Assembly (NCBI RefSeq): GCF_902713615.1 | Contig: NC_052176.1 | Location: 2,976,001 to 3,040,000, forward strand | From: Scyliorhinus canicula | Taxonomy: Eukaryota | Length of the DNA stretch: 64,000 bases | Direction of reading: 5' to 3' | Part shown: in pieces, positions 5,576-35,036 of the stretch | Layout: every line of letters starts with the position of its first letter | How positions within the stretch are numbered: position 1 is the first letter of the stretch | Notes under the pieces: model-generated | The model's database searches: none | Seen by the model: only the letters and a program-made list of their open reading frames with translations | Told to the model about the DNA's origin: nothing | Program-made: the position numbers and the translations under genes

Positions 5576-8535
5576 CCCTCTCCTCCTCTTACCACAGCCC
5601 CTCCCCCTTCTTACCACCGCCCCTCCCCCTTCTTACCACCGCCCCTCCCCCTTCTTACCACCGCCCCCCCACTTCTTACCACCGCCCCCCCCACTTCTTA
5701 CCACCACCCCTCCCCTTCTTACCACCGCCCCTCCCCCTCCTCTAACCACCGCCCCTCCCCCTCCTCTAACCACCGCCCCCCCCACTTCTTACCACCCGCC
5801 CCCCCCACTTCTTACCACCGCCCCTCCCCCTTCTTACCACCGCCCCTCCCCCTTCTTACCACCCGCCCCTCCCCCTTCTTACCACAGCCCCTCCCCCTTC
5901 TTACCACAGCCCCTCCCCCTTCTTACCACCGCCCTCCCCCTTCTTACCACCGCCCCCCCCCTTCTTACCACCGCCCCTCCCCCTTCTTACCACCACCCCT
6001 CCCCCTTCTTACCACAGCCCCTCCCCCTTCTTACCACCGCCCCTCCCCCTTCTTACCACAGCCCCTCCCCTTCTTACCACCGCCCCTCCCCCTTTTTACC
6101 AACGTCCCTCCCCTCTAACCGCCGCCCCTCGCCTCCTCTAACCACCGCCCCTCCCTCTCCGCTAGCCGCCGCCCCTCCCTCTCCGCTAACCACCTCCCCT
6201 CCTCTAACCACCACCCCTCCCCTCCTCTAACCACCGCCCCTCCCTCTCCGCTAGCCGCCGCCCCTCCCTCTCCGCTAACCACCTCCCCTCCTCTAACCAC
6301 CACCCCTCCCCTCCTCTAACCACCGCCCCTCCCCTCCTCTAACCACCCGCCCCTCCCTCTCCGCTAGCCGCCGCCCCTCCCCCTCCTCTAGCCACCACCC
6401 CTCCCCCTCCTCTAACCGCCACCCCACCCCCTCCTCTAACCACCGCCCCTCCTCTACCACCACCCCTCCCCCTCCTCTAACCACCGCCCCTCCTCTACCC
6501 ACCACCCCTACCCCTCCTCTAACCACCGCCCCTCCCCCTCCTTAACCACCGCCCCTCCCCCTCCTTAACCACCGCCCCTCCCCCTCCTTAACCACCACCC
6601 CTCCCCCTCCTCTTACCCCCCCGTCCCCCCTCCTCTAACCCCCCCACCGCCCCTCCTCTAACAACCGCCCTCTCCCCCTCCCAACCACACGCCCCTCCCC
6701 GCTCCTTCTACACAACAACCCTCCCCCTCCTCTTAACCACCGCCCCTCCCCCTCCTCTACCACCGCCCCTCCCCCTCCTCTATCCACCCCCCGCCCCCTC
6801 CTCTAACCACCTCCCTCCCCCTCCTTAAACCCCGCCCCTCCCCCATCCTCTAACCACCACCACTCCCCCTCCCTAACCCCGCGCCCCCCTCCCCCTCCTC
6901 TAACCACCACGCCCTTCACCCTCCTCTAAACCACCTCCCCTCCCCCTACCCTAACCACCGTCCACCTCCCCCATCCTCTACCCACCGCCCCTCCCTTCCT
7001 CTAACCACCACCGCCCCTCCTCCTACCCACCACCCTCCCCCCTCCTCTAACACGCCCCCTCCCCCTCCTTAACCACCACCCCTCCCCCTCCTCTACCCAC
7101 CACCCGCCCCTCACCCCTCCTCTAACCACCCCGCCCCTCCTCTAACCACCCGCCCCTCCCCCTCCTCTAACCACCGCCCCTCCCCCTCCTCTAACCACCC
7201 CCCCCCCCCCTCTAACCACCGCCCCTCCTCTAACCACCGCCCCTCCCCCTCCTTAACCACCCCCGCCCCTCCCCCTCCTTAACCACCGCCCCTCCCCCTC
7301 CTCTACCCACCAAACCCCCTCCCCCCTCCTCTAACCACACCCCTCCCCTCCTCTAAACAACCGCCCCTCCCCCTCCTCTAACCACCCGCCCCTCCCCCTC
7401 CTCTAACCACCCGCCCCTCCTCTACCCACCACCCCTCCTCTACCCACCACCCCTCCCCCTCCTCTAACCACCACCCCTCCTCTACCCACCACCCCTCCCC
7501 CTCCTCTAACCACCACCCCTCCTCTAACCACCGCCCCTCCTCTAACCACCACCCCTCCTCTAACCACCGCCCCTCCTCTAACCACCCGCCCCTCCTCTAA
7601 CCACCCGCCCCCCCCCTCCTCTAACCACCGCCCCTCCCCCTCCTCTAACCACCCGCCCCTCCCCCTCCTCTAACCACCGCCCCGCCCCCTCCTCTAACCA
7701 CCGCCCCTCCCCCTCCTCTAACCACCGCCCCTCCCCCTCCTCTAACCACCGCCCCTCCCCCCCTCCTCTAACCACCCGCCCCTCCCCTTCCTCTAACCAC
7801 CGCCCCCCCCCCTCCTCTAACCACCGCCCCTCCCCCTCCTTAACCACCGCCCCTCCCCCTCCTCTAGCCACCACCCCTCCCCCTCCTCTAACCACCACCC
7901 CTCCCCCTCCTCTAACCACCACCCCTCCCCCTCCTCTAACCACCGCCCCTCCTCTAACCACCGCCCCTCCCCCTCCTCTAACCACTGCCCCTCCCCCTCC
8001 TCTAACCACCGGCCCTCCTCTAGCCACCGCCTCTCACCCCCTCTAACCACCGCCCTCCCCCTTCTTACCACCACCCCTCCTCTAACCACCGCCCCTCCCC
8101 CTCCTCTAACCACCGCCCCTCCCCCTCCTCTAACCACCGCCCCTCCCCCCTCCTCTAACCACCGGCCCTCCCCCTCCTCTAACCACCACCCCTCCCCCTC
8201 CTCTAACCGCCGCCCCATCCTCTAACCACCACCCCTCCCCCTCCTCTAACCGCCGCCCCATCCCTCCTCTAACCACCGCCCCTCCCCCCTCTTACCACCA
8301 CCCCTCTTACCACCGCCCTAACCCCCTATTGCAACCGCCCCTCCCCATCCCCTTACCACTGCCCCTCTTATCACCACCCCTCCCCTCCTCTTATCACCAC
8401 CCCTCTTACCTCCACCCCTCCCCTCCCATACCGCCACCCCTCCCCTCCTCTTACAACCGCCCCTCCCCCTCTTACCTCCACCCCTCCCCTCCCACACCGC
8501 CACCCCTCCCCCCTCTTACCACCTCCCCCACCACT
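5576..8535. repeat. ~3 kb C-rich minisatellite (~20-25 bp units, e.g. CTCCTCTAACCACCGCCCCTCCCC)
   Basis: Direct tandem repetition with variant blocks; noisier in ~6600-7400. Confidence 0.95.
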
Positions 8536-16261: not shown

Positions 16262-16345
16262 ATGTCTGAGGATAGCTGCATTGTGATGACAGATTGCTTA
16301 ACAATCGAGCGTTTCTTGCGCAGGATCGGAATTGTGCACCCGCAG
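16262..16345 (+). CDS. TOP6BL: TOP6BL exon 5 (MSEDSCIVMTDCLTIERFLRRIGIVHPQ)
   Basis: aatag| and |gtattg; strong match to LMTDCLVIKHFLRKIIMVHPK. Confidence 0.95.
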
Positions 16346-16814: not shown

Positions 16815-16898
16815 CCAGATATCCTTCACCAGAAAATAAATCCATCATTTTCAGATTTAGAAATAGAATTATTAATTGAGAATGAATTACTGTCCTTC

Positions 16899-18780: not shown

Positions 18781-19115
18781 GGGTGGCACGATGGCACAGA
18801 GGTTAGCACAGTTGCTTCACAGCTCCAGGGTCCCAGGTTCGCTTCCAGGCTTGGGTCACTGTCTGTGCGGAGTCTGCACGTTCTCTCCCCGTGTGTGCGT
18901 GGGTTTCCTCCGGGTGCTCCGGTTTCCTCCCACAGTCCAAAGATGTGCGGGTTAGGTGGGGTTGGCCATGTTGAATTGCCCTTAGTGTTCAAAAAGGTTA
19001 AGCGGGGATTACAGGGATAGGGTAGAGATGTGGGCTTGAGTAGGGTGCTCTTTGTAAGGACCGTTGCAGACTCGATAGGCCGAATGGCCTCCTTCTGCAC
19101 TGTAAATTCTATGAA
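18781..19115 (+). mobile_element. HE1-type SINE with CR1-like tail (representative of ~20 copies, e.g. 19768, 20507, 23818, 39626, 43300-45888 cluster, 53308, 54427, 55725)
   Basis: tRNA head, V-domain, tail GGCCGAATGGCCTCCTTCTGCACTGT shared with CR1 3' ends. Confidence 0.9.
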
Positions 19116-19252
19116 AATTGGCAGTCACAATAGACAAAAAAACAATTTCATTAAAACGGCTATACTTTCATATATAGGTGCAGTGCTTCTTTTTCTATTG
19201 GTTACAAACATTCTTCTTAAGACTAAAGTAAGAAAAAATATTTATCTTACAG

Positions 19253-19308
19253 GTAAAAATCCAGTTTGATGTTGAAGTAAATGGTAACCTATCGACTCAC
19301 ATCTTTGG
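19253..19308 (+). CDS. TOP6BL: TOP6BL exon 6 (VKIQFDVEVNGNLSTHIFG)
   Basis: ttacag| and |gtaaga; matches VRFHFSVKVNGILSTEIFG. Confidence 0.95.
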
Positions 19309-20151
19309 GTAAGAATATACACTTCCTAGCACTAGCTCTTGTGTGTGGCATTTCACTATTTTTTATTATTGGTGTCAAATATTTCTTGAGGAGCTCTCAA
19401 TCTCGTTCCTCTCAAACTTCTGCTTATCAAGAACTGTATGATTCATAATACTCTCTGCATTTAAACCAAAACACCATCACACCAATGCTTGTCAGCTCCA
19501 CCGGTTCCTTATGCAATGGCTGCAAGATTGACGTTACTCAGTGGAGTGGACAGGTTGTAGGGGCAGTGGTAATCTGGAGTCAGAAGGACAGGAATATATG
19601 GGCTACTGGGGCAACGAGTGATTTGAGCGTGAGGTGAGGATTTTGATGCTGATTAGCTGGGGCACAGGGAGTTGCAATAGCATGGGGTGACGCGTGTCCG
19701 GGCCGTTATATGGAAGAAGATATGGAAGACGCGGTCCTATATGGCTCGCGTTCAAAACCTGTTGATTGGGTGGCACGGTAACACAGTGGTTAGCACCATT
19801 GCTTCACAGCGCCAGTGACCCGGGTTCGATTCCCGCTTGGGTCACTGTCTGTGAGGAGTCTGCACGTTCTCTCCGTGTCTGCGTGGGTTTCCTCCGGGTG
19901 CTCCGGTTTCATCCCACGGTCCAAAGATGTACGGGTTAGGTGAATTGGTCATGTTAAATATACCCGTAGTGTCCAAAACTTAAGGGGTCGCTGGGTTACG
20001 GGGATAGGCTGGAGGTGTGGGCTTAGGTAGGGTGCTCTTTCAGGGGGCGGTGTAGACTCAATGGGCTGAACGGCCTCCTGCACTGTAAATTCTATAATTT
20101 TTATTGCATCAAGTATAGATTTTTAATCAGTCTTCACCATTCACAAGTATC

Positions 20152-21104
20152 TGTTATAATACTGTTTGGTAATATATCGTTACTCATTGCTTCGTAATCC
20201 AGAATGGTCTGATGGTGTGATTATAAAGAAGCCACCAATCTCTAACTTAAAGCAAAACTGATTTATTGAATAACGATTAAAATATATTGAGTTTGCACAC
20301 TCCACAGAACTGTAACTATTATTAAAGTAATCTATGTTTAAGTAATAACTGGGGCTGTTTAGCTCACAGGGCTAATCGCTGGCTTTGAAAGCAGATCAAG
20401 GCAAGCCAGCAGCACGGTTCGATTCCCGTAACAGCCTCCCCGAACAGGCGCCGGAATGTGGCGACTAGGGGCTTTTCACAGTAACTTCATTTGAAGCCTA
20501 CTCGTGACATAGAACATAGAACATAGAACAGTACAGCACAGAACAGGCCCTTCGGCCCTCAATGTTGTGCCGAGCCATGATCACCCTACTCAAACCCACG
20601 TATCCACCCTATACCCGTAACCCAACAACCCCCGCCTTAACCTTACTTTTATTAGGACACTATGGGCAATTTAGCATGGCCAATCCACCTAACCCGCACA
20701 TCTTTGGACTGTGGGAGGAAACCGGAGCACCCGGAGGAAACCCACGCACACAGGGGGAGGACGTGCAGACTCCACACAGACAGTGACCCAGCCGGGAATC
20801 GAACCTGGGACCCTGGAGCTGTGAAGCATTTATGCTAACCACCATGCTACCCTGCTGCCCCTAACAATAAGCGATTTTCATTTTTTCATTCATTTCATTT
20901 CATAATAGCTAATGAACTACACGTGCTACTTCAATCTAGTCTTCACGATGCTGTGATCTATCTCTGTCTCTGCTGCTAACTCTTAACTGACTACCCAAGA
21001 TTCCCTGAGTTCTTATATTTATACTAGCGGTGCCCTCTAGTGTTTGTATTACCCTGAGATGTAATAATTAACCCTTTACTTGTATACATATACATATCAT
21101 TACG
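20152..21104 (-). mobile_element. Solo LTR carrying two nested SINEs
   Basis: TG...CG (mutated CA); 5-bp TSD GTATC. Confidence 0.65.
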
Positions 21105-21167
21105 GTATCTACTAATCTAGAACTGCATTTTCCATTAATATGCCTAACCTTGATGCTTTAATTTTAG

Positions 21168-21236
21168 GAATGAGAACCTGGACAAATTCTGCAGCGATGG
21201 ACACACTTTACTTTGTGGCAGCACTCACTATGTAAG
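21168..21236 (+). CDS. TOP6BL: TOP6BL exon 7 (NENLDKFCSDGHTLLCGSTHYV)
   Basis: ttttag| and |gtaagt; phase 2-2; matches VENE...GIALLVDSQHYV. Confidence 0.88.
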
Positions 21237-21874
21237 GTAAGTATCAGGTCTTGTGCTGTGCACAACCTGTTTCTACCGAGAGGTTGGCGGTGGACCAATC
21301 ATTGGCGCGCATGCACAGTGCGGCCGCGTGTTTTTTACATGTTCGCGGCCATTTTGAAGGCCGCTTGCAGCCGGCATAGTTAAAAGCCGGCTGCTGCGCA
21401 CGGATTTGCACAATCGGGAGCGCCCCCCGACGGATGGCTCCGCGACCCTCCCGACACCCACCCGCCGGTCGCCCCCACCCCCCCCGAGTTTGACAGTGCC
21501 TGCCCTAAGGGACACCTGGTGACCCAGTTGTGTTTTTTATGATGAACTGGCAGTTTTGAGAATAAGTTTTCTCCAGTGCCAATGCAGGATTCAACCAGAT
21601 TTACTGAATTCAAATTCACAACTTGTCACAATGGGGCCTTTTTAAGTTGCTATGCATATATTAGTAATTAGTGTGAGAACACGTATCTGACTTGTGAGTG
21701 CCAAGATCGCGACACTCAATCTGGAGGTCACACAATGGATTAAACATTGTGTGGGCCAATATCGGATACAATTAAGCTGACAGTCCAAATTCCAGAGAAT
21801 CACTTGGTTAAAGCGGTGTTTTATGCCAGGAATGTTCAATCACAGAATAGACCTTTGTTATTATCTTAAGTTAT

Positions 21875-22359
21875 GATGTGGAGATGCCGGCGTTGAACCG
21901 GGGTGGGCACAGTAGGAAGTCTTACGGGCAGCACGGTGGCACAGTGGTTAGCACTGCTGCCTGCAGCATTGAGGACCCGGATTCGAATCCCGGCCCTGGG
22001 TCACTGTCCGTGTGGAGTTTGCACATTCTCCCCGTGACTGCGTGGGTTTCACCCCCACAACCCAAAAGATGTGCAGGGTAGGTGGATTGGCCACGCTAAA
22101 TTGCCCCTTAATTGGAAAAAAATTACTGGGTACTCTAAATTTAAAAAAAAGAAGTCTTACAACACCAGGTTAAAGCCCAACAATTTTGTTTGGAATCACT
22201 AGCTTTCGGAGTGTAGCTCCTTCATCAGGTGACTCAGATCCTGAGGAAGGAGCAGTGCTCCGAAAGCTAGTGATTCCAAACAAACCTGTTGGGCTTTAAC
22301 CTGGTGTTGTAAGACTTCTTACTGTGCCCACCCCAGTCCAACGCCGGCATCTCCACATC
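21875..22359. mobile_element. Penelope-like palindromic terminal element (SINE inserted in left arm)
   Basis: Long inverted arms; each arm contains a CTGANGA...GAAA hammerhead core. Confidence 0.75.
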
Positions 22360-22482
22360 TCACTTTAATGGCATTCCTACCTTTCCACCACAGTGTTACT
22401 TTGATTAATGCAAGTTGCCTTTGTAAATATTAATAACAGTTAAATCTCTATCTTATAAATATACTCTTTTTTTTCTGAGCAG

Positions 22483-22675
22483 AGACTTTGCGTATGCAGA
22501 TGATTCACGTTGTTGCAGACTCCATCCTATTGCTGGGAAGCCTTTTCCTCTTTCTATTCCTGACAAACTCGCAGAAGATGGGGTGTGCGGAGTGCTTGAG
22601 ATATTATCAATCGCAGCCATTTGTCCTTGCCTGAAAAATTACCCCAACAAACCCACTAGAGTTTCAAACCTATCT
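22483..22675 (+). CDS. TOP6BL: TOP6BL exon 8 (RDFAY...CCRLHPIAGKP...AAICPC...RVSNLS)
   Basis: gagcag| acceptor; matches CSRIHPVLGHP...AAALCP...RISSVS; ends at U12 donor |GTATCCTT. Confidence 0.93.
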
Positions 22676-24406
22676 GTATCCTTCGTTGAAAGGTTAGACA
22701 ATACATGTAGATGTAAATAGGAAACAACAAGGAAATAATCATTTTTCATATAGTCACAAGTCGGCTTACATTAACACTGCAATGAAGTTACTGTGAAAAT
22801 CCCCTCGTCGCCACATTCCGGCGCCTGTTCGGGCACACAGGGGGATAATTCAGAATTCTCAGCTGGTCCGGGAATTGAGCCTCCGCTTCTGACCTTATTC
22901 CGCATCACAAACTAGCTGTCTAGCCCACTGAGCTAAACCAGCCCCTGCGAGGTGATTCTCTGCTGAAGTGCGTGTGAGCCTTGTGACATGCTTCCATTTT
23001 GTGTACCGTCCACCATATTGTTAAGATGGCTATGGGGGCAGGTATGATCAATCTGACTTTACGCCCGAGCACTGGGGAAGTGCGAATCAATGTCACTTTT
23101 CCTCAATCACTGACCAGACAGTCGCTTTGGCTGAATACCTTTGACAGCCTAGCACTTGAACTGTGTTTTCCTTGCGCGTTTCAATGAATATTTTTGTTTC
23201 GTTAGCTGGCACTGATTGGAAAGCATGTAAATGGGGTGCCACATTAGGATTAAAAATTAGGATTAAATGCTGTTTATTCACGGAATGTTGGTATTGTTGC
23301 CAAAGCCAGCATTTCTTGCGGGGGGGGTTCCGACCACGGGGGGTTCCTCCGATGTGGCCTGCCCCGCGGTCGGGACCCACCGATCAGCGGGCCGGCCTCT
23401 CTGTCTCCTGGCCTCCTTTCTACCGCGCTGGCGCCTGTACTCCTGCGGCATGTTGGGTCGAGGCCGGCGCGGACAAGGGAGACACCGCGCATGCGCAGAA
23501 ATCGCACCGGTGGGACTGCGCATGCGCGCATCCCCCGACGCATGGGAGGGGGTGGTGAAGTGGGAGCCTAGTTCGGGAGGCCGGCGGAAAACACCAAAGG
23601 GAGGGGAAGGGTAGGTAACCTTTGATGGGGAGGTGCCTCTAATGAGCTCAGTGGGTCCACGAAAGAAGTTCTCCCATTCCTGACATCAGCCCACGCGGGT
23701 AAAGTTGCCAGCTTTCCTGCATGTTCCAGCGCTGGTGGGGGCGAGGCCTTAAGTGGCCATTCATTGGCCTCTTAAGGGCCTCATTAAGCCCAAGGATGGG
23801 CAGGCTGCACGACAGTGGACCGCACGGTTGCACAAGTGATTAGCACTGTGGCTTCACAGCACCAAGGTCCCAGGTTCGATTCCCTGCTGGGTCACTGCCT
23901 GTGCAGAGTCTGCACGTTCTCCCTCGTGTCTGCGTGGGTTTCCTCCGGGTGCTCCGGTTTCTTCCCACAGTGCAAAGACGTGCAGGTTAGGTGGATTGGT
24001 CATCTTAGCGACCACAAAAAAGGTTAGGAGGGGTTATTGGGTTACGGGGATAGGGTGGAAGTGAGGGCTTACATGGGTCGGTGCCGACTCGATGGGCCAA
24101 ATGGCCTCCTTCTGCACTGTGTGTTCTATGTTCTAACACCTTCCCCATAAAGTTTTAGCTAGGTCATGGGCAGGCAAGTAGGTGGCTTGAGGGTCACCTG
24201 CTGGAATTTACATGCCCTCACGCCTTCAAACCCACCGGCAGAGGAGCGTGAGATCCAGCCTTATGAGTGAGATTTAGCCATTAGACCATGGAGTAGAGGT
24301 GGTGAAGGACTATGACATTTGGTATATCATTTTGGATCTTGCAAATAGTTTCTACTGGTCAATGATATCTGCAAACGATAAAACAGCAATCCTTGACTTG
24401 ACACAT
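22676..24406 (+). other. TOP6BL: U12-type (minor spliceosome) intron with GT-AT termini, TOP6BL intron 8
   Basis: 5' GTATCCTT; U12 branch box TCCTTGAC at 24390-24397; in-frame, homology-supported junction ...ACACAT|ATATTT. Confidence 0.8.
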
Positions 24407-24554
24407 ATATTTATATATGGACCATCTGACTTGCCTATATTGTTCAAGCACAGCAAAAATGCTTTGTCATTCTTCACGGATCCATCTCATCTAGCAGACT
24501 GGAAGCAATATGAACAATATCTGACCCAAAATCCAGACTTCAAGACAGTAGAAG
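24407..24554 (+). CDS. TOP6BL: TOP6BL exon 9 (IFIYGPSDLP...FFTDPSHLADWKQY...NPDFKTVE)
   Basis: Matches IFLYGPLGLP...FFKDTSSLVDWKKY...NLD. Both boundaries are non-canonical (AT| and |GA). Confidence 0.88.
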
Positions 24555-25529
24555 GAAAGTTTATATTTGTTTATCAAAACCTGATATCCTATGGTGGTTA
24601 AAGTACTGTTTATGTAAAGTTGTTGGGTTTTTTTGTCATTAAAACCGGCAATGTGGATAACATAGGTACAAAATACTTTCCTTCTTCCCGGGTCCACCAA
24701 AGCCTTGGGACATGGGCATACGTATAGACCTGAGAGCAGCACGGTGGCGCAGTGGGTTAGCCCTGCTGCCTCATGGCGCCGAGGTCCCAGGTTCGATCCC
24801 GGCTCTGGGTCACTGTCCGTGTGGAGTTTGCACATTCTCCCCGTGTCTGCGTGGGTTTCACCCCCCCACAACCCAAAGATGTGCAGAGTAAGTGGATTGG
24901 CCACGCTATATTTGCCCCTTAATTGGAAAAAATGAATTGGGTACCCTAAATTTAAAAATAAATAAATAAAATAAATATAGAACTGAAGCTACTCAGAGAA
25001 CCCTTTGAATAAGGATGATGGAGGTTTGCACACAGTAGTACTTACTGACAAAACAACCGCCTGGTCATTATATTTCACCATCTTTAATTATCTTCTATCC
25101 TATTTCCACACATTTCTCACCATTTCTAGACCCCCGAGGCGGTTTGCCCTGGCTAGGAAATGGCTTTAGGGGCACCCCCCAATCTTTCCTAAATGGCCAC
25201 TCATCAAATATACATTTACAGTGGATGTTGGGTTATCAACTCCGAGAGTGGTCCAAATTTGCGACGCGTCTTTCTCTGTGGGTAGAAACATGGGAGATCC
25301 TTCTCCTTCCTTGCCCCTGAGGAGAGAGGCTCGTTGAGGCACCTCAATTGTCACCAAAATCAACCAGGAATCAAGCTTGGGATCTGCCTGCTTTGTTATT
25401 CAACCAGCTAATAATGAGCGGAAGTTATAAGCTGAACGCATGCATCATGTCATCGCACCGAGGGTTTTAATGGTGACTAAGATGTTTTTTTCGGTCTTCG
25501 CTGACTGTTTTGCAAATGCAATTAACAGC

Positions 25530-25543
25530 CCACTAGGAGGCGC
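25530..25543 (+). promoter_or_regulatory. Candidate CTCF site
   Basis: CCACTAGGAGGCGC, close to the CTCF core consensus, in non-repeat intronic DNA. Confidence 0.45.
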
Positions 25544-26474
25544 TGTGAGTATGCAACACGAATAGTGGCCATTCAATGAGTTCCATTGATAGAAACGTCC
25601 AGTCAATCTGTTTGAGCTATAATTTGCAGTCTGATTATTTTTACTTTATGCAAGAAGTCCTTGAAATACCAGCCTCAGTTTGTCGAGACTGAAGTAATTT
25701 GCAGTGAAAATTACTCTCGGCTTAATTGTAATTACTGTAATTAGTATTAAAGCCACTACAGCTACGTACATGGCCTCATAATAGGTTACTTGTTCAGGTC
25801 TGTAATTAAGAATTTAAATTGCTCATTTTAAACAAAAATCACTGGTAATCCAACACAGACAAAACTTCCTGAACTGACAAGGAGTAAAAATACTGGGTTG
25901 GATTCTCCGCCTCACGACCCGGGAAATGTGTATTGCGATTGGGCGGAGTGCTAACCATTTCGCCACCGTGCCACCCAGACAGTCTGTCTTTTTTAAAAAT
26001 ATAAATTGAGAGTACCCAATTAATTTTTTCCAATTAAGGGGCAATTTAGCGTGACCGATCCCCCTACCCTGCAAATCTTTGGGTTGTGGGGGTGAAACCC
26101 ACGCAGACACGGGGAGAATGTGCAAACTCCACACCGACAGTGACCCAGGGCCGGGATCGAACCTGGGACCTCGGCGTCGTGAGGCAGCAGGGCTAACCCA
26201 CCGTGCTACCCTGATGTCTGTCTTTTAAACGCACCCCTTTTTATACTACTCCCAGGCTCCTGGTTGCTCACACTGCTGAGGGCTGCCTGTGTCCTTTAAA
26301 TGTTCAGAAGGCCTCTGGTCATCCGGGAGCCCACCCAGGCCGCCCTTCTGGCCGCCCTCATACCCCAGCTGTATCATCTAGGGGAAAACTCAATCAGGGG
26401 CCCACCAGGTGTTGGCCCTTCTCAGCGGCGCTGCCCCATTGCATATAAATGTTTCTGGAACATACCACTCCATT

Positions 26475-26509
26475 CACCTGAGGAAGGAGCAGTGCTCCGA
26501 AAGCTCGTG
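26475..26509 (+). ncRNA. Minimal hammerhead motif in a single Penelope-like arm (26471-26570)
   Basis: cac-CTGAGGA-A-GGAGC-agt-GCTCC-GAAA-GC-TC-gtg. Confidence 0.65.
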
Positions 26510-27115
26510 TTTGAAACAAACCTGTTGGACTTTAACCTGGTGTTGTCAGACTTCTTACTGTGCTCACCCGAACCAGAGGACACCTGTACCACAGCCTTGA
26601 GAACCACCTCCCTGGTTCCCTGCCCCCTCTCGGGTCAGAGGCCTCACCAGTGACCCCCAACCCCGCCGGATCCCCGGTTGTCTCCTCCTAGTGAGACTGG
26701 CAGTGCTGACTGCCTCTGCCACCACCTCTCAGGCAGTGTTCAGGACGGCAGGCTTGAGTCTGCATTAGCCCCGGCGAAGACGGTGTCCCTCCACTCCTCA
26801 CTGACATGGAGCTGTGGGTCCACCTCGGACTTCCCACCTCGCGGGGGGGGGGGGGGGGGGGGGGGCAGGTTTTCTGTGAGATGTCTTGATGGCTTCAGTG
26901 GGTGTGTGGTAAGTGGAACGCTTAAAAACCCTCCAGCTACCAGGTTCTTTAGCTCTAACTCTGGCCTTAGTGGTTAGAACGTCTGCTGGGCTGGGAACTG
27001 CTCTAAATTTGCGCCGGCAGAGTGCTAGCCCATTAGCATGACCCGAATCACTCCCCAAATAGCGCTCCTAATGGGAACGTGAACTGCACGCAATTCAGTC
27101 TCGGCATCAACACTT

Positions 27116-27786
27116 TGGCGCGATTCTCCGCTGCCCACGACGGGTCGGAGAATAGCGGGAAGGCCTTCCCGACAATTTTCACGGCCTCCTGCTATTCTCC
27201 CCCCCTCCGGCCGCCCCCCGACACGAATCGCTGCTCGCCGTTTTTTACGGAGAACAGCGATTCTCCGCAGGCCGATAGGCCGAATACCGCGGAGTTTACG
27301 GCCGTTTTCACGGCCGCGATCATACCTGCTTTCAGCGTTCGTGAAAACGGCCGCAAAGTGCCCGTCCCGGGCAACCATGGCACCGATTGGCACGGCCGCA
27401 CCGATCACGGGCAGCGGGTCCGATACCCGCGCACTATTTGTTCTTCCGCCGCCCCGCAGGATCAGTCCGCGGGGCGGCTGAGGGGCATGACGGCCCGTGC
27501 ATGCGCGGGTTTGACGCGTCTGCGTGATGACGTCATGCGCGGGTTGGAGCCACCCATCCCGCGCATGCGCGGATTACGTCATTGTGCGCGTCAGCCGCTG
27601 TGACTCTTGGCGGGCGGAGTTAGCGACGTTCGCTAACTCCGCGTCACCGTGATTCCCTGGGCCCCGATACTAGCCCCGCCCGGGGGGGAGAATCGGGTCC
27701 CGGGACGGAGCTCCGAGGCTGGCGTGAAACACGGCCAGTTTCATGCCAGCCTTCACGGCACGCCGGATTTGCGGAGAATCGCGCCC
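27116..27786. mobile_element. GC-rich MITE (PIF/Harbinger-like, non-autonomous)
   Basis: TIR GGCGCGATTCTCCGC / GCGGAGAATCGCGCC. Confidence 0.78.
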
Positions 27787-29207
27787 TTAGTCTCCCAAAC
27801 GGAGAATCCTGCCCACTGTCTACTGACTCGAAAGAAAATAACCTTTTCAAATTTCAGGGAGAACAAAGAACAAAGAAAAGTACAGCACAGGAACAGGCCC
27901 TTCGGCCCTCCAAGCCAGTGCCGACCATGCTGCCCGTCTAAACTAAAATCTTCGACACTTCCTGGGTCCGTATCCTGGGTCTGGAGACAATGGCTCGTGG
28001 TAATGTCACAAGACTAGTAATCATAAGGGTCAGGCTAAATGCTCCGGGGAAACGGGTTCAAATAAAATCAGGCATGAAAAGCTACTCTCAGGAATGGTGA
28101 CCATGAACCTATCTTCGATTGTTGCAAAACCCCATCTGGCTCACGAATGTCCTTTAGGGAAGGAAATCTGCCGTCCTTACCTGGCCTGGCCTACCTGTGA
28201 CTCCAGACACGTAGTAATGTGAAATAGCCTAGCAAGCCACTCAGTTCAAGGACAGTTAATAATAATCATTATTATTGTCACAAGTCGGCTTACATTAACA
28301 CTGCAATGCAGTTACTGTGAAAAGCCCCTCGTCGCCACATTCCGGCGCCTGTTCGGGTTCACGGAGGGAGAATTCAGAATGTCCAATTCACCCAACAAGC
28401 ACGTCTTTCGGGATTTGTGGGAGGAAACCGGAGCGCCCGGAGGAAACCCACGCAGACATGAGGGGGAGAACGTGCAGACTCCGCACAGGCAGTGACCCAA
28501 GCCGGGAATCGAACCTGGGACCCTGGTGCTGTGAAGCAACAGTGCAGCAAATCCTTTCCAGCGATGCCCATGATGAAATTACTAAAATACCTTGGCTGTT
28601 TAGCACAGGGCTAAGTCGCTGGCTTTGAAAGCACACCAAGCAGGTCAGCAGCACGGTTCGATTCCCGTAACAGCCTCCCCTGGACAGGCGCCGGAATGTG
28701 GCGACTAGGGGCTTTTCACAGTAACTTCATTGAAGCCTACTCGTGACAATAAGCTATTTCCATTTTCATTTCCTTTGAGAGATTTTCACCTCGAATGCTC
28801 AGTGCATTAATAACTCTTAAATGAACAGGCAAGGGAGCATCAGTATGATTTTCAACCTAAAAGTCACGATTATCTCAACATTTTAGACTCCATGGCCTGA
28901 ATTTTACGTTCGGGCGGGAACGGATGTTAAACCTGATCCTGCCCGAGATCACGTTGTTGAGGCGATATTACGCTGGCTGGCCAATTAATGGCCATCCAGC
29001 ATGAAATGCGCTCTATGAAAGGCTGAGCACTGCCGGGGAAAGTGGGAGGAGGGTGGGCGCTAGGAGAAGGGAGCTGGCACTTCCAACGTGCTCTGTTGGG
29101 ACGGCAGCCGTTGCAGAGTTGTCTGAGGGAGCTGCTGACTTGCTTAAAAAAAGAAATACCAGTGGAAAAACTATGCGACGAGTGTCCGTGTCGTACAGTA
29201 CACAGAC

Positions 29208-29793
29208 TGTCATGGGAGAAAGGCTTTTGTCTTATCGCATGGCTTCAGTGATGTCATTGTGTGGGTGGAGCTGGGCTGTGGCTCAGTGAGCTGTTTTACT
29301 TTCACTTTTGATTTGGCTGCTGTGGACTCGGGCAGGAGAAAGAAGTGTTTTGGCCTGTCTCTCTCTGTTTTCATTTTAAATAATCTGGTCCAGTTAAAAA
29401 TCACCTCGGTGGTGGTTTTCGATTTAGTTTGCTTTCCGGCAGGGTTTAATCCTGCTGGTGAGACTGGGTCAGAATCTCAGGGAAAGTCAGTCTTATTCAG
29501 GTGAGAATGCGGAGTGCTGGGCCACGCCCTTGAAAAGGTGGTTTATGGGATTTTGTTTTTGAATTGGAACAGTTAAGGGGGAATTCATTAAGTGTTATAC
29601 ATAGATTACTGTAGCTGTGTGGGGTCTTTATGTTTGTAATTGATAAAGATTCTGCTGTTAAATCTTACTAAGTTCTTGAGCTTATTTTGATTAAAGTGTC
29701 TGGGAAGACTGTTGAATCGCACCTGAAGGGAAGACTTTTGTGCTCATCGTAGCCAAATTCAACAAAAAGTTACAGGACAGGTGACCCATAACA
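29208..29793 (+). mobile_element. Solo LTR, 4-bp-TSD family
   Basis: TGTCATG...CATAACA; TSD AGAC; homologous to the 36611 and 60175 copies. Confidence 0.8.
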
Positions 29794-30880
29794 AGACCTT
29801 CATCCCCAGACCCACTTGTTAATATTATTTGGGCTTTGACTTGCATCCCACCCCGGACTGAGGTTGCAACTGAAACATAAAGACCGCCTTGCCAATCGGC
29901 CCACCCGCCAACCATATAGGCGACGTAACTCCTAGTCAATTGCTGCTTAATTCATTTAAGGGCGGCACGGTGGCGCAGTGGGTTAGCCCTGCAGTCTCAC
30001 GGCGCTGAGGTCCCAGGTTCGATCCCGGCTCTGGCTCACTGTCCGTGTGGAGTTTGCACGTTCTCCCCGTGTTTGCGTGGGTCTCACCCCCACAACCCAA
30101 AGGTGTGCAGGGTAGGTGGATTGGCCAGGCTGAATTGTCCCTTAATTGGGAAAAAATGAATTGGGTACTCTAAATTAATATAATTTTTTAAAAATCATTT
30201 AATTCATCCCGAGGTCGTGAAAGTCACTAAATAAATGCAAGTCTTTAAAAATGTATTGTGATGAAATGTTATGCTGGCTGCACTTGTTGTATGCACTTGT
30301 TTACTGTGACTCGATGAGCTGCATATATATGTAAACTGTTGCTGGAATAGCCTGCCCCAAAAGTGATTTCCTGATGGCCCACTGGGTAACTTTGTCAGAT
30401 GTGTGGTGCTAAGCTACAGGATGGAAGGCCCCGGATTCAACACCAGACCAAAAATTGGTCCCGGCGCCCTTGGTCAATGAACGGGAACATTCAGCCACTC
30501 CTAATCCCTACGCAGTTAGTGTACGCTGGAATGTGTCAGTTTAGTGAGGACAGGTGTGATGCATGGCATGAACATAGAACATACCGTGCAGAAGGAGGCC
30601 ATTCGGCCCATCGAGTCTGCACCGATCCACTTAAGCCCGCACTTTCACCCTAACCCAATAACCCCTCCTAACCTTTTTGGACACGAAGGGACAATTTAAT
30701 GCAGTCAATCCACCTAACCTGCACGTCTTTGGACTGTGGGAGGAAACCGGAGCACCCGGAGGAAACCCACACAGACACGGGGGGGGGGGGGGGGGGGGAG
30801 AACGCACAGACAGTGAAGCAGCGGGGAATCAAATCTGGGACCCTGGCGCTGTGAAGCCCCGTGCTAGACCGGGTGCTACC

Positions 30881-31358
30881 TGTCTTGTTATGCTCTTGAC
30901 GTAGCATAAACTGCTTCCTTGATGTTCACCCTGACAAAGGAAGGTTCAGACGTGGAGATAACTTCAACACGTTTATTGAACTATTTACAATTCTCCTACT
31001 CGGGTCCGCCACTACTGTTAATCCTTCTATAGCTACTCAGACTGACGAACCAGTCTGCTACAATCCATGTGGTGGGTGTGATGTTGAATCAACCCTGTGT
31101 CTGTACTCACTGACTGTCTCCACTGGAAAGAGGAAGATCATGTGTGCTGTGTCCTTTATATATGGGTTGGTGTAATGCCCCCCCTGTGGTAGTGTCACCT
31201 CTGTGTGTATCGTGAATGCTCATTGGTCGTGTCCTATCTTACTGTCCTATTGGTTGAGTGTCTGTGTGTCATGTCTCTGGTGCTCCCTCTAGTGTCTAGC
31301 TAGTCTACGTGTATTTACATTAACCCCTTGTGTATCTACAGTGATGCATATCACCACA
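30881..31358 (-). mobile_element. Solo LTR (478 bp) inserted in an HE1 SINE
   Basis: TG...CA; 5-bp TSD CTACC. Confidence 0.85.
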
Positions 31359-31433
31359 CTACCGTGCTGCCCAATTGATAAATTTAGGTGAAAAAAAGAT
31401 ATGGTTAAGATTGTGCTGCTGTGGTCCCCTCAG

Positions 31434-31770
31434 ATGCGGGCAGGTTGTTTCCACTGGCGGGTGAAAGCAGAACTAGGGGACATAGCCTCAAAATACGGGG
31501 AAGTAGATTTAGGACTGAGTTTAGGAGGAACTTCTTCACCCAAAGGGTTGTGAATCTATGGAATTCCTTGCCCAGTGAAGCAGTTGAGGCTCCTTCATTA
31601 CATGTTTTTAAGGTAAAGATAGATAGTTTTTTGAAGAATAAAGGGATTAAGGGTTATGGTGTTCGGGCCGGAAAGTGGAGCTGAGTCCACAAAAGATCAG
31701 CCATGATCTCATTGAATGGCGGAGCAGGCTCGAGGGGCCAGATGGCCTACTCCTGCTCCTAGTTCTTATG
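31434..31770 (+). mobile_element. CR1 LINE 3' end
   Basis: TRGHSLK...RRNFFTQRVVNLWNSLP plus 3' UTR. Confidence 0.85.
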
Positions 31771-31889
31771 TGACACACTGGAGGGTTCGTGTCCCCACAG
31801 GAATTGCACCTCTGCCGGATAATAAGGAAAGAAATGGGAAAACAAGTTTTAAAAGCCAGTTCCACCGTATACGTATGTGTTTGTTACAG

Positions 31890-34811: not shown

Positions 34812-35036
34812 CATGATGTGGAGATGCCGGCGTTGGACTGGGGTGAGCACAGTAAGAAGTCTTACAACACCAGGTTAAAGTCCAACAGGTTTGTTTCAAA
34901 CACGAGCTTTCGGAGCACGGCTCCTTCTTCAGGTGAATGTGAATAGATTCACCTGAAGAAGGAGCCGTGCTCCGAAAGCTCGTGTTTGAAACAAACCTGT
35001 TGGACTTTAACCTGGTGTTGTAAGACTTCTTACTGT
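34812..35036. mobile_element. Penelope-like palindromic element
   Basis: ~90-bp perfect inverted arms; flanking direct repeat CTGTCGTCTGGGT (34796-34808 / 35033-35045). Confidence 0.8.
34950..34984 (+). ncRNA. Minimal type-I hammerhead ribozyme motif (mirror copy on - strand at 34901-34935)
   Basis: cac-CTGAAGA-A-GGAGC-cgt-GCTCC-GAAA-GC-TC-gtg. Confidence 0.7.

What the first reader, a model, noticed from the sequence alone, without database searches (positions are those of the whole stretch)
22676..24406. Minor-spliceosome intron with rare GT-AT ends in a meiotic DSB gene
Seen: U12 donor |GTATCCTT and U12 branch box TCCTTGAC with the branch A 10 nt from the junction. There is no pyrimidine tract, and the nearest AG (24385-6) is out of frame and upstream of the branch box. 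The junction ...CAT|ATA gives RVSNLS|IFIYGP, gap-free against mammalian RISSVS-IFLYGP. Established: U12 introns are rare, often rate-limiting, and occasionally have non-standard termini. Inference: TOP6BL output depends on the minor spliceosome through a GT-AT intron.
Basis: partly seen in the sequence, partly recalled or inferred. Interest (0 to 1): 0.8.

Follow-up and report, generated by a model that had tools for sequence, protein, structure and literature searches.

The report
Catshark TOP6BL minor intron, GT-AT ends
The catshark's meiotic gene TOP6BL carries the same minor-spliceosome (U12-type) intron already catalogued in mouse and human, here with the rare but documented GT...AT ends, which a skate and an anole lizard share; it is a real and tidy example, not a new kind of thing.

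Summary
GTATCCTT starts at 22676. TCCTTGAC lies at 24390-24397, with its A 10 nt before the intron end. The intron ends ...CACAT|ATA at 24406/24407, with no usable AG and no pyrimidine tract.

The window is Scyliorhinus canicula TOP6BL. Its exons translate identically to the NCBI protein of that species where they were compared. Only the junction 22675^24407 (GT-AT), or the same mRNA written one base to the left (TG-CA), reproduces that protein.

The intron is orthologous to the catalogued human and mouse TOP6BL minor intron. Its ends differ between lineages:
- AT-AC in sterlet and anchovy, and by sequence in a turtle
- AT-type 5' site in human and mouse
- GT-AG in an agamid lizard
- GT-AT in Anolis sagrei, little skate and catshark

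The skate's last 17 intron bases differ from the catshark's at one position. So the terminal T is neither an assembly slip nor recent.

GT-AT U12 introns are a known rare class, and Top6bl is a known minor-intron gene. This is a new member of a known kind.

I saw no RNA reads.

The scan had noted this same stretch before (s1-240151), but nothing like it on other DNA.

The parts
22484..22675 (+). TOP6BL coding exon upstream of the minor intron (64 codons, DFAYADDSRCCRLHPIAG...PTRVSNLS). It is the sixth coding block mapped in the window and is phase 0 at both ends.
   Evidence: One search gives the translation. One search shows that the GT-AG junction 21236^22484 and the end at 22675 reproduce NCBI protein P0025. 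One search gives Pfam DUF4554 at E 2.4e-8.
22676..22684 (+). U12-type 5' splice site GTATCCTTC (GT subtype).
   Evidence: The same GTATCCTT or ATATCCTT sits at the same protein position in skate, two lizards, turtle, anchovy and sterlet.
22676..24406 (+). Minor (U12-type) intron, 1731 nt, phase 0, with termini GT...AT.
   Evidence: only 22675^24407 (GT-AT) or 22674^24406 (TG-CA) reproduces P0025; the protein alignment across the joint has no gap.
24390..24397 (+). U12 branch-point box TCCTTGAC. The presumed branch A is at 24396, 10 nt before the last intron base.
   Evidence: The box and the following 9 nt are conserved in little skate, and the box is also present in sterlet.
24405..24406 (+). 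Non-canonical 3' terminal dinucleotide AT.
   Evidence: The little skate has the same AT in an identical context. Anolis sagrei also has AT.
24407..24554 (+). Next TOP6BL coding exon (148 nt, IFIYGPSDLP...FKTVE plus the first base of a Gly codon).
   Evidence: One search gives Pfam DUF4554 at E 8.1e-6.
24555..31889 (+). Downstream intron of the same exon. It appears to be GA-AG (gaag|GAAAGT ... TTACAG|ga). It provides context and is not part of the minor intron.
   Evidence: GA-AG is the only placement ending in AG that reproduces P0025. Searches show the same G|GAAAGT donor in little skate. Sterlet, anchovy, turtle and anole have a normal GT there.

Best explanation
The stretch 22676-24406 is the conserved minor-spliceosome (U12-type) intron of the small-spotted catshark TOP6BL gene. 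TOP6BL encodes the B-like partner of SPO11 in making meiotic double-strand breaks.

Proposed mechanism (inferred, not observed here): U11 and then U6atac pair with GTATCCTT at the 5' end. U12 pairs with TCCTTGAC and bulges the A at 24396. No AG lies within reach, so the 3' cut is set by distance from the branch point and falls after AT at 24406. This joins ...AAC CTA TCT to ATA TTT ATA... in frame.

Shown here: the motifs, their positions, the orthology, the only junction compatible with the annotated protein, and the conservation of the AT end in a skate.

The intron was most likely AT-AC in the bony-fish ancestor, judging from sterlet, anchovy, the turtle sequence and the mammalian AT-type 5' site. 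In the elasmobranch line it acquired G at +1 and T at the last base. This is a case of the known subtype switching of U12 introns. The GT-AT state has been kept since before sharks and skates split.
For: 1. Motifs and spacing at the stated coordinates.
2. Gene identity: Pfam DUF4554 on both exons. Exon translations equal to S. canicula protein P0025.
3. Exhaustive enumeration of junctions within +/-40 nt: only GT-AT, or the same mRNA written as TG-CA, reproduces P0025. P0025 also crosses a second non-canonical junction, so it was probably built on transcript alignments rather than ab initio (inference).
4. Orthologous intron at the same codon boundary: little skate GT-AT, Anolis sagrei GT-AT, Phrynocephalus GT-AG, anchovy AT-AC, sterlet AT-AC, turtle ATATCCTT...ATAC.
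5. Human C11orf80 and mouse Gm960 are listed with 5' site TCC|ATATCCTTT in the Minor Intron Database paper (PMC6717393 supplement). Splicing around the Top6bl minor intron was validated as altered in U11-deficient mouse testis (PMC12956336).
6. GT-AT is a tabulated U12 subtype, with 4 human and 3 mouse cases, and was reported as competent for U12 splicing (PMC1557818).
7. Between catshark and skate the intron upstream of the branch box does not align, but the box-to-junction segment is identical at 16 of 17 bases.
8. Weak hint: three runs guessed to be RNA hold 100% of the words sampled from the 157-nt exon stretch 22519-22675, but only 0.15-0.17 of those from 22400-24700. That is roughly the exon share of that stretch.
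Against: No RNA read or contig across the junction was seen here.

RefSeq models of three other elasmobranchs (S. torazame, Pristiophorus japonicus, Narcine bancroftii) read ...VY|IFIYGP instead of ...VS|IFIYGP. That corresponds to a CT...AC placement whose mRNA differs by one base. I read this as an aligner artefact, because CT/AC is the reverse-strand form of GT/AG, but I could not test that.

The motifs by themselves occur at chance frequency in the window.

The repeated ACACATATAT at the 3' end offers other A-N sites at +8, +12 and +14 from the branch A. These could be used part of the time and would break the frame.
Confidence: 0.85

Rival explanations
1. The intron is U12-type, but the real cut sites are those implied by the RefSeq models of other elasmobranchs. 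The exon would end two bases earlier (22673) and the next exon would start after AC at 24404. This is a CT...AC placement and gives ...NLY|IFIYGP.
For: Three independent RefSeq models (P0024, P0051, P0026) have Y instead of S at this position. AC at 24403-24404 lies 8 nt from the branch A.
Against: The catshark's own NCBI protein has S, which only GT-AT or TG-CA reproduces. Ser is the residue at this position in all four tetrapod proteins aligned. U12 5' cleavage is fixed directly before the RTATCC box (established knowledge), so a cut 2 nt upstream has no known mechanism. CT/AC is the reverse-strand form of GT/AG, which read aligners favour. Misannotation next to non-canonical sites is documented (PMC4176328).
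Confidence: 0.05
2. Base 24406 is an assembly error or a rare allele and is really G, which would make this an ordinary GT-AG U12 intron.
For: None found.
Against: An independent assembly of little skate has the same T in an identical 9-nt context. Gene models in five other elasmobranchs all fail or deviate at this intron, which would not happen with a plain GT-AG. Anolis sagrei also has AT.
Confidence: 0.02
3. The intron is removed by the major spliceosome, or through a hybrid pathway, using one of the upstream in-frame AG acceptors (24298 or 24307). This would add 33-36 residues.
For: Both AGs are in frame, and the frame is open from 24299.
Against: The inserted residues have no counterpart in any of six orthologues or in P0025. 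The donor GTATCC after TCT is a poor U1 site. There is no pyrimidine tract. The orthologous intron is classed as minor in human and mouse.
Confidence: 0.03

Closest known systems
The minor intron of human TOP6BL (C11orf80) and mouse Top6bl (Gm960), listed in the Minor Intron Database (Olthof et al. 2019, PMC6717393). Its splicing was validated as disturbed in U11-deficient mouse testis (PMC12956336).
   Same: Same gene and same codon boundary, after the Ser codon that precedes (I/V)F.YxP. Same U12 5' box (RTATCCTT) and a branch box close to the 3' end.
   Different: Human and mouse have the AT-type 5' site (TCC|ATATCCTTT). The catshark has G at +1 and T as the last base (GT-AT). I did not retrieve the mammalian 3' dinucleotide.
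GT-AT U12-type introns, such as those conserved between human and mouse in DEADC1 and SLC24A6 (Sheth et al. 2006, PMC1557818, Tables 2 and 3).
   Same: U12 5' site and branch box with GT at the start and AT at the end. Conserved between distant species. The class was reported as competent for U12 splicing.
   Different: A different gene and a different lineage (cartilaginous fishes, plus an anole). Here the same intron can be seen in three or four terminal states across vertebrates.
Subtype switching of U12 introns between AT-AC, GT-AG and non-canonical ends (Sheth et al. 2006, Table 3; Burge et al. 1998, cited from my own knowledge).
   Same: One orthologous intron is AT-AC in ray-finned fishes, GT-AG in an agamid lizard, and GT-AT in an anole and in elasmobranchs.
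   Different: GT-AT here is not a brief transitional state. It is shared by a shark and a skate, lineages separated for very roughly 270-300 million years (a date from my own knowledge, not tested).
GA-AG U2-type introns of the FGFR genes (cited in PMC4176328). Relevant to the neighbouring intron only.
   Same: The donor G|GAAAGT keeps the U1 consensus apart from +2 A, and it is conserved between species.
   Different: A different gene. It is not part of the minor intron, and I did not see RNA evidence.

Membership tests
U12-type (minor-spliceosome) intron | 5' splice site matching /RTATCCTT directly at the exon end | tested here: met
   GTATCCTT at 22676-22683, immediately after the last codon of the exon.
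U12-type (minor-spliceosome) intron | Branch-point box TCCTTRAY a short, fixed distance (about 10-15 nt) upstream of the 3' splice site | tested here: met
   TCCTTGAC at 24390-24397, with the A 10 nt before the last intron base. The orthologues show 10-12 nt, and anchovy 16-17 nt.
U12-type (minor-spliceosome) intron | No polypyrimidine tract of the U2 type | tested here: met
   The last 40 nt are 47.5% pyrimidine and contain no run.
U12-type (minor-spliceosome) intron | The orthologous intron is classed as minor in other species | tested here: met
   RTATCCTT plus a branch box at the same codon boundary in six other vertebrates. Human and mouse are listed in the Minor Intron Database paper.
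U12-type (minor-spliceosome) intron | Removal requires the U11, U12, U4atac and U6atac snRNPs | not testable with these tools
   This needs knock-down or inhibition experiments. Mouse Top6bl splicing responds to U11 loss (PMC12956336), but that is in another species.
GT-AT subtype of U12 introns | The intron begins with GT | tested here: met
   G at 22676 and T at 22677. Read-through gene models of bamboo shark and skate translate VS(L/F), which corresponds to GTATCCTT.
GT-AT subtype of U12 introns | The mRNA junction places AT as the last two intron bases | tested here: inconclusive
   Only GT-AT or TG-CA reproduces the NCBI catshark protein and the gap-free homology. No RNA read was examined, and three related RefSeq models place the junction differently.
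TOP6BL / TOPOVIBL (Pfam DUF4554, PF15091) | Sequence match to the family profile and to named orthologues | tested here: met
   PF15091 scores 33.9 bits on the upstream exon (cut-off 27) and 25.6 bits on the downstream exon. Exon translations equal the S. canicula protein. Congeneric proteins are named 'type 2 DNA topoisomerase 6 subunit B-like'.

The most novel reading that the evidence does not exclude
In elasmobranchs, the 148-nt TOP6BL exon at 24407-24554 is bounded on both sides by non-canonical splice sites: the GT-AT minor intron upstream and a GA-AG intron downstream. Both are conserved between catshark and skate. Ray-finned fishes, a turtle and lizards have a normal GT donor downstream.

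If the two weak sites are recognised together by exon definition, this exon could act as a long-preserved, rate-limiting gate on production of the meiotic break-forming protein. It would also show that GT-AT can be a stable end state rather than a passing step in U12 subtype switching.
Probability: 0.15. Interest if true: 0.55.

Novelty: new member of a known kind. Interest (0 to 1): 0.3.

Why it matters
This adds a clean, deeply conserved case to the short list of GT-AT minor introns. It shows one orthologous intron in AT-AC, GT-AG and GT-AT states across jawed vertebrates, which is useful for studying how U12 intron ends change.

It also has a practical consequence. Automatic gene models of TOP6BL in bamboo shark and little skate are split at this intron. 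Models in cloudy catshark, sawshark and an electric ray are altered at it by one residue. The sequence evidence here shows where those models should join.

It does not change what is known about TOP6BL or the minor spliceosome. The gene's dependence on minor splicing was already documented in mammals.

Tried and rejected
So there is no read-level evidence on the junction or on base 24406.

2. The search for homologous proteins with the downstream-exon ORF found no candidates, so no transcript-derived fragments were recovered.

Three proteins were not on record.

4. Alternative acceptors: the in-frame AGs at 24298 and 24307, AC at 24397 and AC at 24404 were rejected on homology, frame or position.

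5. I first assumed the upstream exon started at 22519, after the AG at 22517-22518. The annotated protein requires 22484.

6. The Pfam profile seemed to skip 3 positions at the joint. The multiple alignment shows no gap.

7. An Rfam scan of the whole window at gathering thresholds found nothing. The 3' splice region has no unusual fold (z = 0.23).

8. Motif counts alone are at chance level, so I do not use them as evidence by themselves.

9. A literature search for C11orf80 together with 'minor intron' in main texts found nothing. The gene appears only in supplements.

Full report
**What is in the sequence.** On the + strand the codons AGA GTT TCA AAC CTA TCT (RVSNLS) end at 22675. They are followed directly by GTATCCTTC. 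At the other end, TCCTTGAC occupies 24390-24397, then TTGACACAT. From 24407 the sequence reads ATA TTT ATA TAT GGA CCA (IFIYGP). The A of the box (24396) is 10 nt before the last intron base, 24406. The nearest upstream AG is at 24385-24386, before the box and out of frame. The last 40 intron bases are 47.5% pyrimidine.

**Is it more than chance?** The motifs alone are not. RTATCCTT occurs 3 times on both strands of the window against 3.25 expected from shuffles. The branch-box-plus-AT pattern occurs 3 times against 4.0 expected. The signal lies in where the motifs sit: exactly at two exon ends defined independently by protein homology, and at the same protein position in other vertebrates.

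**Gene and organism.** Both flanking exons hit Pfam DUF4554 (PF15091), the C11orf80/TOP6BL family. A profile-free search with the upstream exon returned elasmobranch and other vertebrate TOP6BL proteins. A word-index search named them:
- Chiloscyllium plagiosum
- Scyliorhinus torazame
- S. canicula
- Leucoraja erinacea
- Narcine bancroftii

The two exons flanking the intron translate identically to the S. canicula protein P0025 (526 aa, from assembly GCA_902713615.2), and the other exons match it at roughly 83-100% in local alignments. The window is therefore small-spotted catshark TOP6BL, running from about 10.5 kb to 41.8 kb on the + strand.

**The junction.** I enumerated every donor and acceptor pair within +/-40 nt of each exon pair and kept those that reproduce P0025.
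- Ordinary introns resolved to GT-AG, for example 21236^22484. This sets the start of the upstream exon at 22484.
- For the intron in question only two placements survive: 22675^24407 (GT-AT), and the same mRNA written one base to the left (TG-CA). The second is possible only because 22675 and 24406 are both T.

Given the perfect U12 box starting at 22676, GT-AT is the meaningful reading. A multiple alignment of the region from catshark, two lizards, a turtle, axolotl and two teleosts has no gap at the joint. The intron is phase 0 and 1731 nt long.

**The same intron elsewhere.** I located the two flanking exons in fetched loci and read the intron ends.

| Species | Locus | 5' end | 3' end | Type |
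|---|---|---|---|---|
| Little skate | L001 | tct\|GTATCCTT | TCCTTAACTTGACACAT\|ata | GT-AT |
| Anolis sagrei | L003 | GTATCCTT | TCCTTAAGCCATCATTAT\| | GT-AT |
| Phrynocephalus forsythii | L002 | GTATCCTT | TTCCTTAGCTAGCAATAG\| | GT-AG |
| Engraulis encrasicolus | L004 | ATATCCTT | CCTTAACCGCACCTCTCCCCAC\| | AT-AC |
| Acipenser ruthenus | L006 | ATATCCTT | TCCTTGACTCAGCACAC\|ata | AT-AC |
| Pelodiscus sinensis | L005 | ATATCCTT | TTCCTTATCCAGCAATAC\| | AT-AC by sequence |

For human and mouse, the supplement of the Minor Intron Database paper lists C11orf80/Gm960 with 5' site TCC|ATATCCTTT and branch boxes TTTTCTTTAGCA and TTTTCTTTAACA (PMC6717393). Altered splicing around the Top6bl minor intron was validated in U11-deficient mouse testis (PMC12956336).

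So this is one ancient minor intron whose end letters differ between lineages. The sterlet's 3' end (TCCTTGAC...CACAC|ATATTC) resembles the catshark's (TCCTTGAC...CACAT|ATATTT). From an AT-AC ancestor the catshark state needs only A to G at +1 and C to T at the last base. That ancestral state is an inference from this small sample.

**Is the terminal T real?** I could not look at reads. However, the little-skate genome is an independent assembly of a species on the other side of the deepest elasmobranch split. It has the same T in the same nine-base context. Upstream of the branch box the two introns do not align at all, while the box-to-junction stretch matches at 16 of 17 bases. That pattern indicates selection on the 3' splice region and rules out a local assembly slip as the source of AT.

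Gene models in other elasmobranchs give indirect support. The bamboo shark and skate models stop by reading through the donor as V-S-(L/F) and split the gene in two. The cloudy catshark, sawshark and electric ray models deviate at this joint. None of this would be expected for a plain GT-AG intron.

**The deviating models.** P0024, P0051 and P0026 read ...VY|(I/V)FIYGP where catshark has ...LS|IFIYGP and skate and bamboo shark have ...VS before the read-through. In the catshark sequence, a Y arises if the exon is ended two bases early and the next exon is started after AC at 24404. This is a CT...AC placement whose mRNA differs from the GT-AT mRNA at a single base.

CT/AC is the reverse-strand spelling of GT/AG, which read aligners reward. 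From my own knowledge of such aligners, a one-mismatch 'canonical' placement can outscore an exact non-canonical one. [quoted passage not shown] I therefore treat the Y models as artefacts, but this is an inference and I keep it as a rival at 5%.

The turtle RefSeq protein likewise implies a junction shifted by 2 nt relative to the obvious AT-AC ends. I could not resolve this.

**RNA evidence.** I have none directly. My single read-laying run covered 19100-24900, to include control introns.

Two weak indirect points remain:
- P0025 crosses two non-canonical junctions (GT-AT here and GA-AG on the other side of the exon). An ab initio predictor would not choose these, so the model probably rests on transcript alignments.
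- Several runs guessed to be RNA hold all the words sampled from the 157-nt exon stretch 22519-22675, but only 0.15-0.17 of those from 22400-24700. That is roughly the exon share of that stretch.

Neither point fixes the cleavage site.

**Mechanism.** The following comes from established knowledge of minor splicing. U11 and later U6atac pair with the ATCCTT of the 5' box. U12 pairs with TCCTTRAY and bulges the branch A. The 3' site is chosen mainly by its short distance from the branch point rather than by a pyrimidine tract and AG.

Here no AG exists between the branch A and well into the exon. Of the A-N dinucleotides within reach (AC at +6 and +8; AT at +10, +12 and +14), only AT at +10 keeps the frame and the conserved protein. 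Sheth et al. summarise experiments showing that GT-AT pairs can splice productively through the U12 pathway, less efficiently than GT-AG or AT-AC. They count 4 human and 3 mouse GT-AT U12 introns, two of them conserved between the species (PMC1557818). Non-canonical ends make up about 3.8% of conserved animal minor introns (PMC10639083).

The ACACATATAT context could allow some slippage to neighbouring sites and so yield frame-shifted products. This is untested.

**Comparison and verdict.** The intron is a member of the U12 class. Four sequence and orthology criteria are met; snRNP dependence is not testable here. It is the orthologue of a catalogued mammalian minor intron. Its GT-AT ends place it in a known rare subtype.

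What is new is modest. This particular intron is GT-AT in catshark and skate, and therefore old. It is also GT-AT in an anole. Across vertebrates it displays AT-AC, GT-AG and GT-AT states. I rate it a new member of a known kind, with interest 0.3.

The more interesting reading that the evidence leaves open is that the 148-nt exon is flanked by two conserved non-canonical sites in elasmobranchs and acts as a splicing gate. I give that about 15%.

Noticed in passing
window 24555-31889 (donor gaag|GAAAGT at 24555; acceptor TTACAG| ending at 31889); L001 about 24169 and 26763: The intron on the other side of the same 148-nt exon appears to be GA-AG. It is the only placement ending in AG that reproduces the NCBI catshark protein. 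The little skate has the same G|GAAAGT donor and an AG acceptor. Sterlet, anchovy, turtle and anole have a normal GT donor there.
   Followed up: partly
proteins P0001, P0002, P0024, P0026, P0051 (other elasmobranchs): Public gene models of TOP6BL break at these two introns. In bamboo shark and little skate the gene is split in two, and the first half reads through the U12 donor as V-S-(L/F). The cloudy catshark, sawshark and electric ray models carry Y instead of S at the joint and then read through the GA donor to a stop.
   Followed up: partly
L005 41859-44446 (Pelodiscus sinensis): The turtle intron reads ATATCCTT...TTCCTTATCCAGCAATAC|, an obvious AT-AC. Yet the RefSeq protein has Ile where AT-AC splicing would give Leu. 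The only placements that reproduce it are TA-CT, AT-TT, TC-TA or CC-AT, shifted 1 to 4 nt. This is either an annotation artefact or an odd real junction.
   Followed up: no
window 34849-35036: A perfect inverted repeat with 90-nt arms, 100% complementary, and an 8-nt spacer sits inside a TOP6BL intron. Rfam gave no hammerhead match, even at E up to 1. It gave only sub-threshold hits to microRNA-precursor models on both strands, as any long perfect hairpin would. The palindrome is real, but Rfam does not support the hammerhead reading.
   Followed up: partly
window 6539, 6562, 6585 and 7066-7837, + strand: Seven of the thirteen + strand TCCTTRAY matches cluster here, three of them 23 nt apart. 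This suggests a short tandem or dispersed repeat upstream of the gene.
   Followed up: no
window 16819-16826, + strand: A second ATATCCTT lies inside the TOP6BL gene, in the intron after the exon ending at 16345. It is not at any exon boundary supported by homology, and the count is consistent with chance.
   Followed up: no
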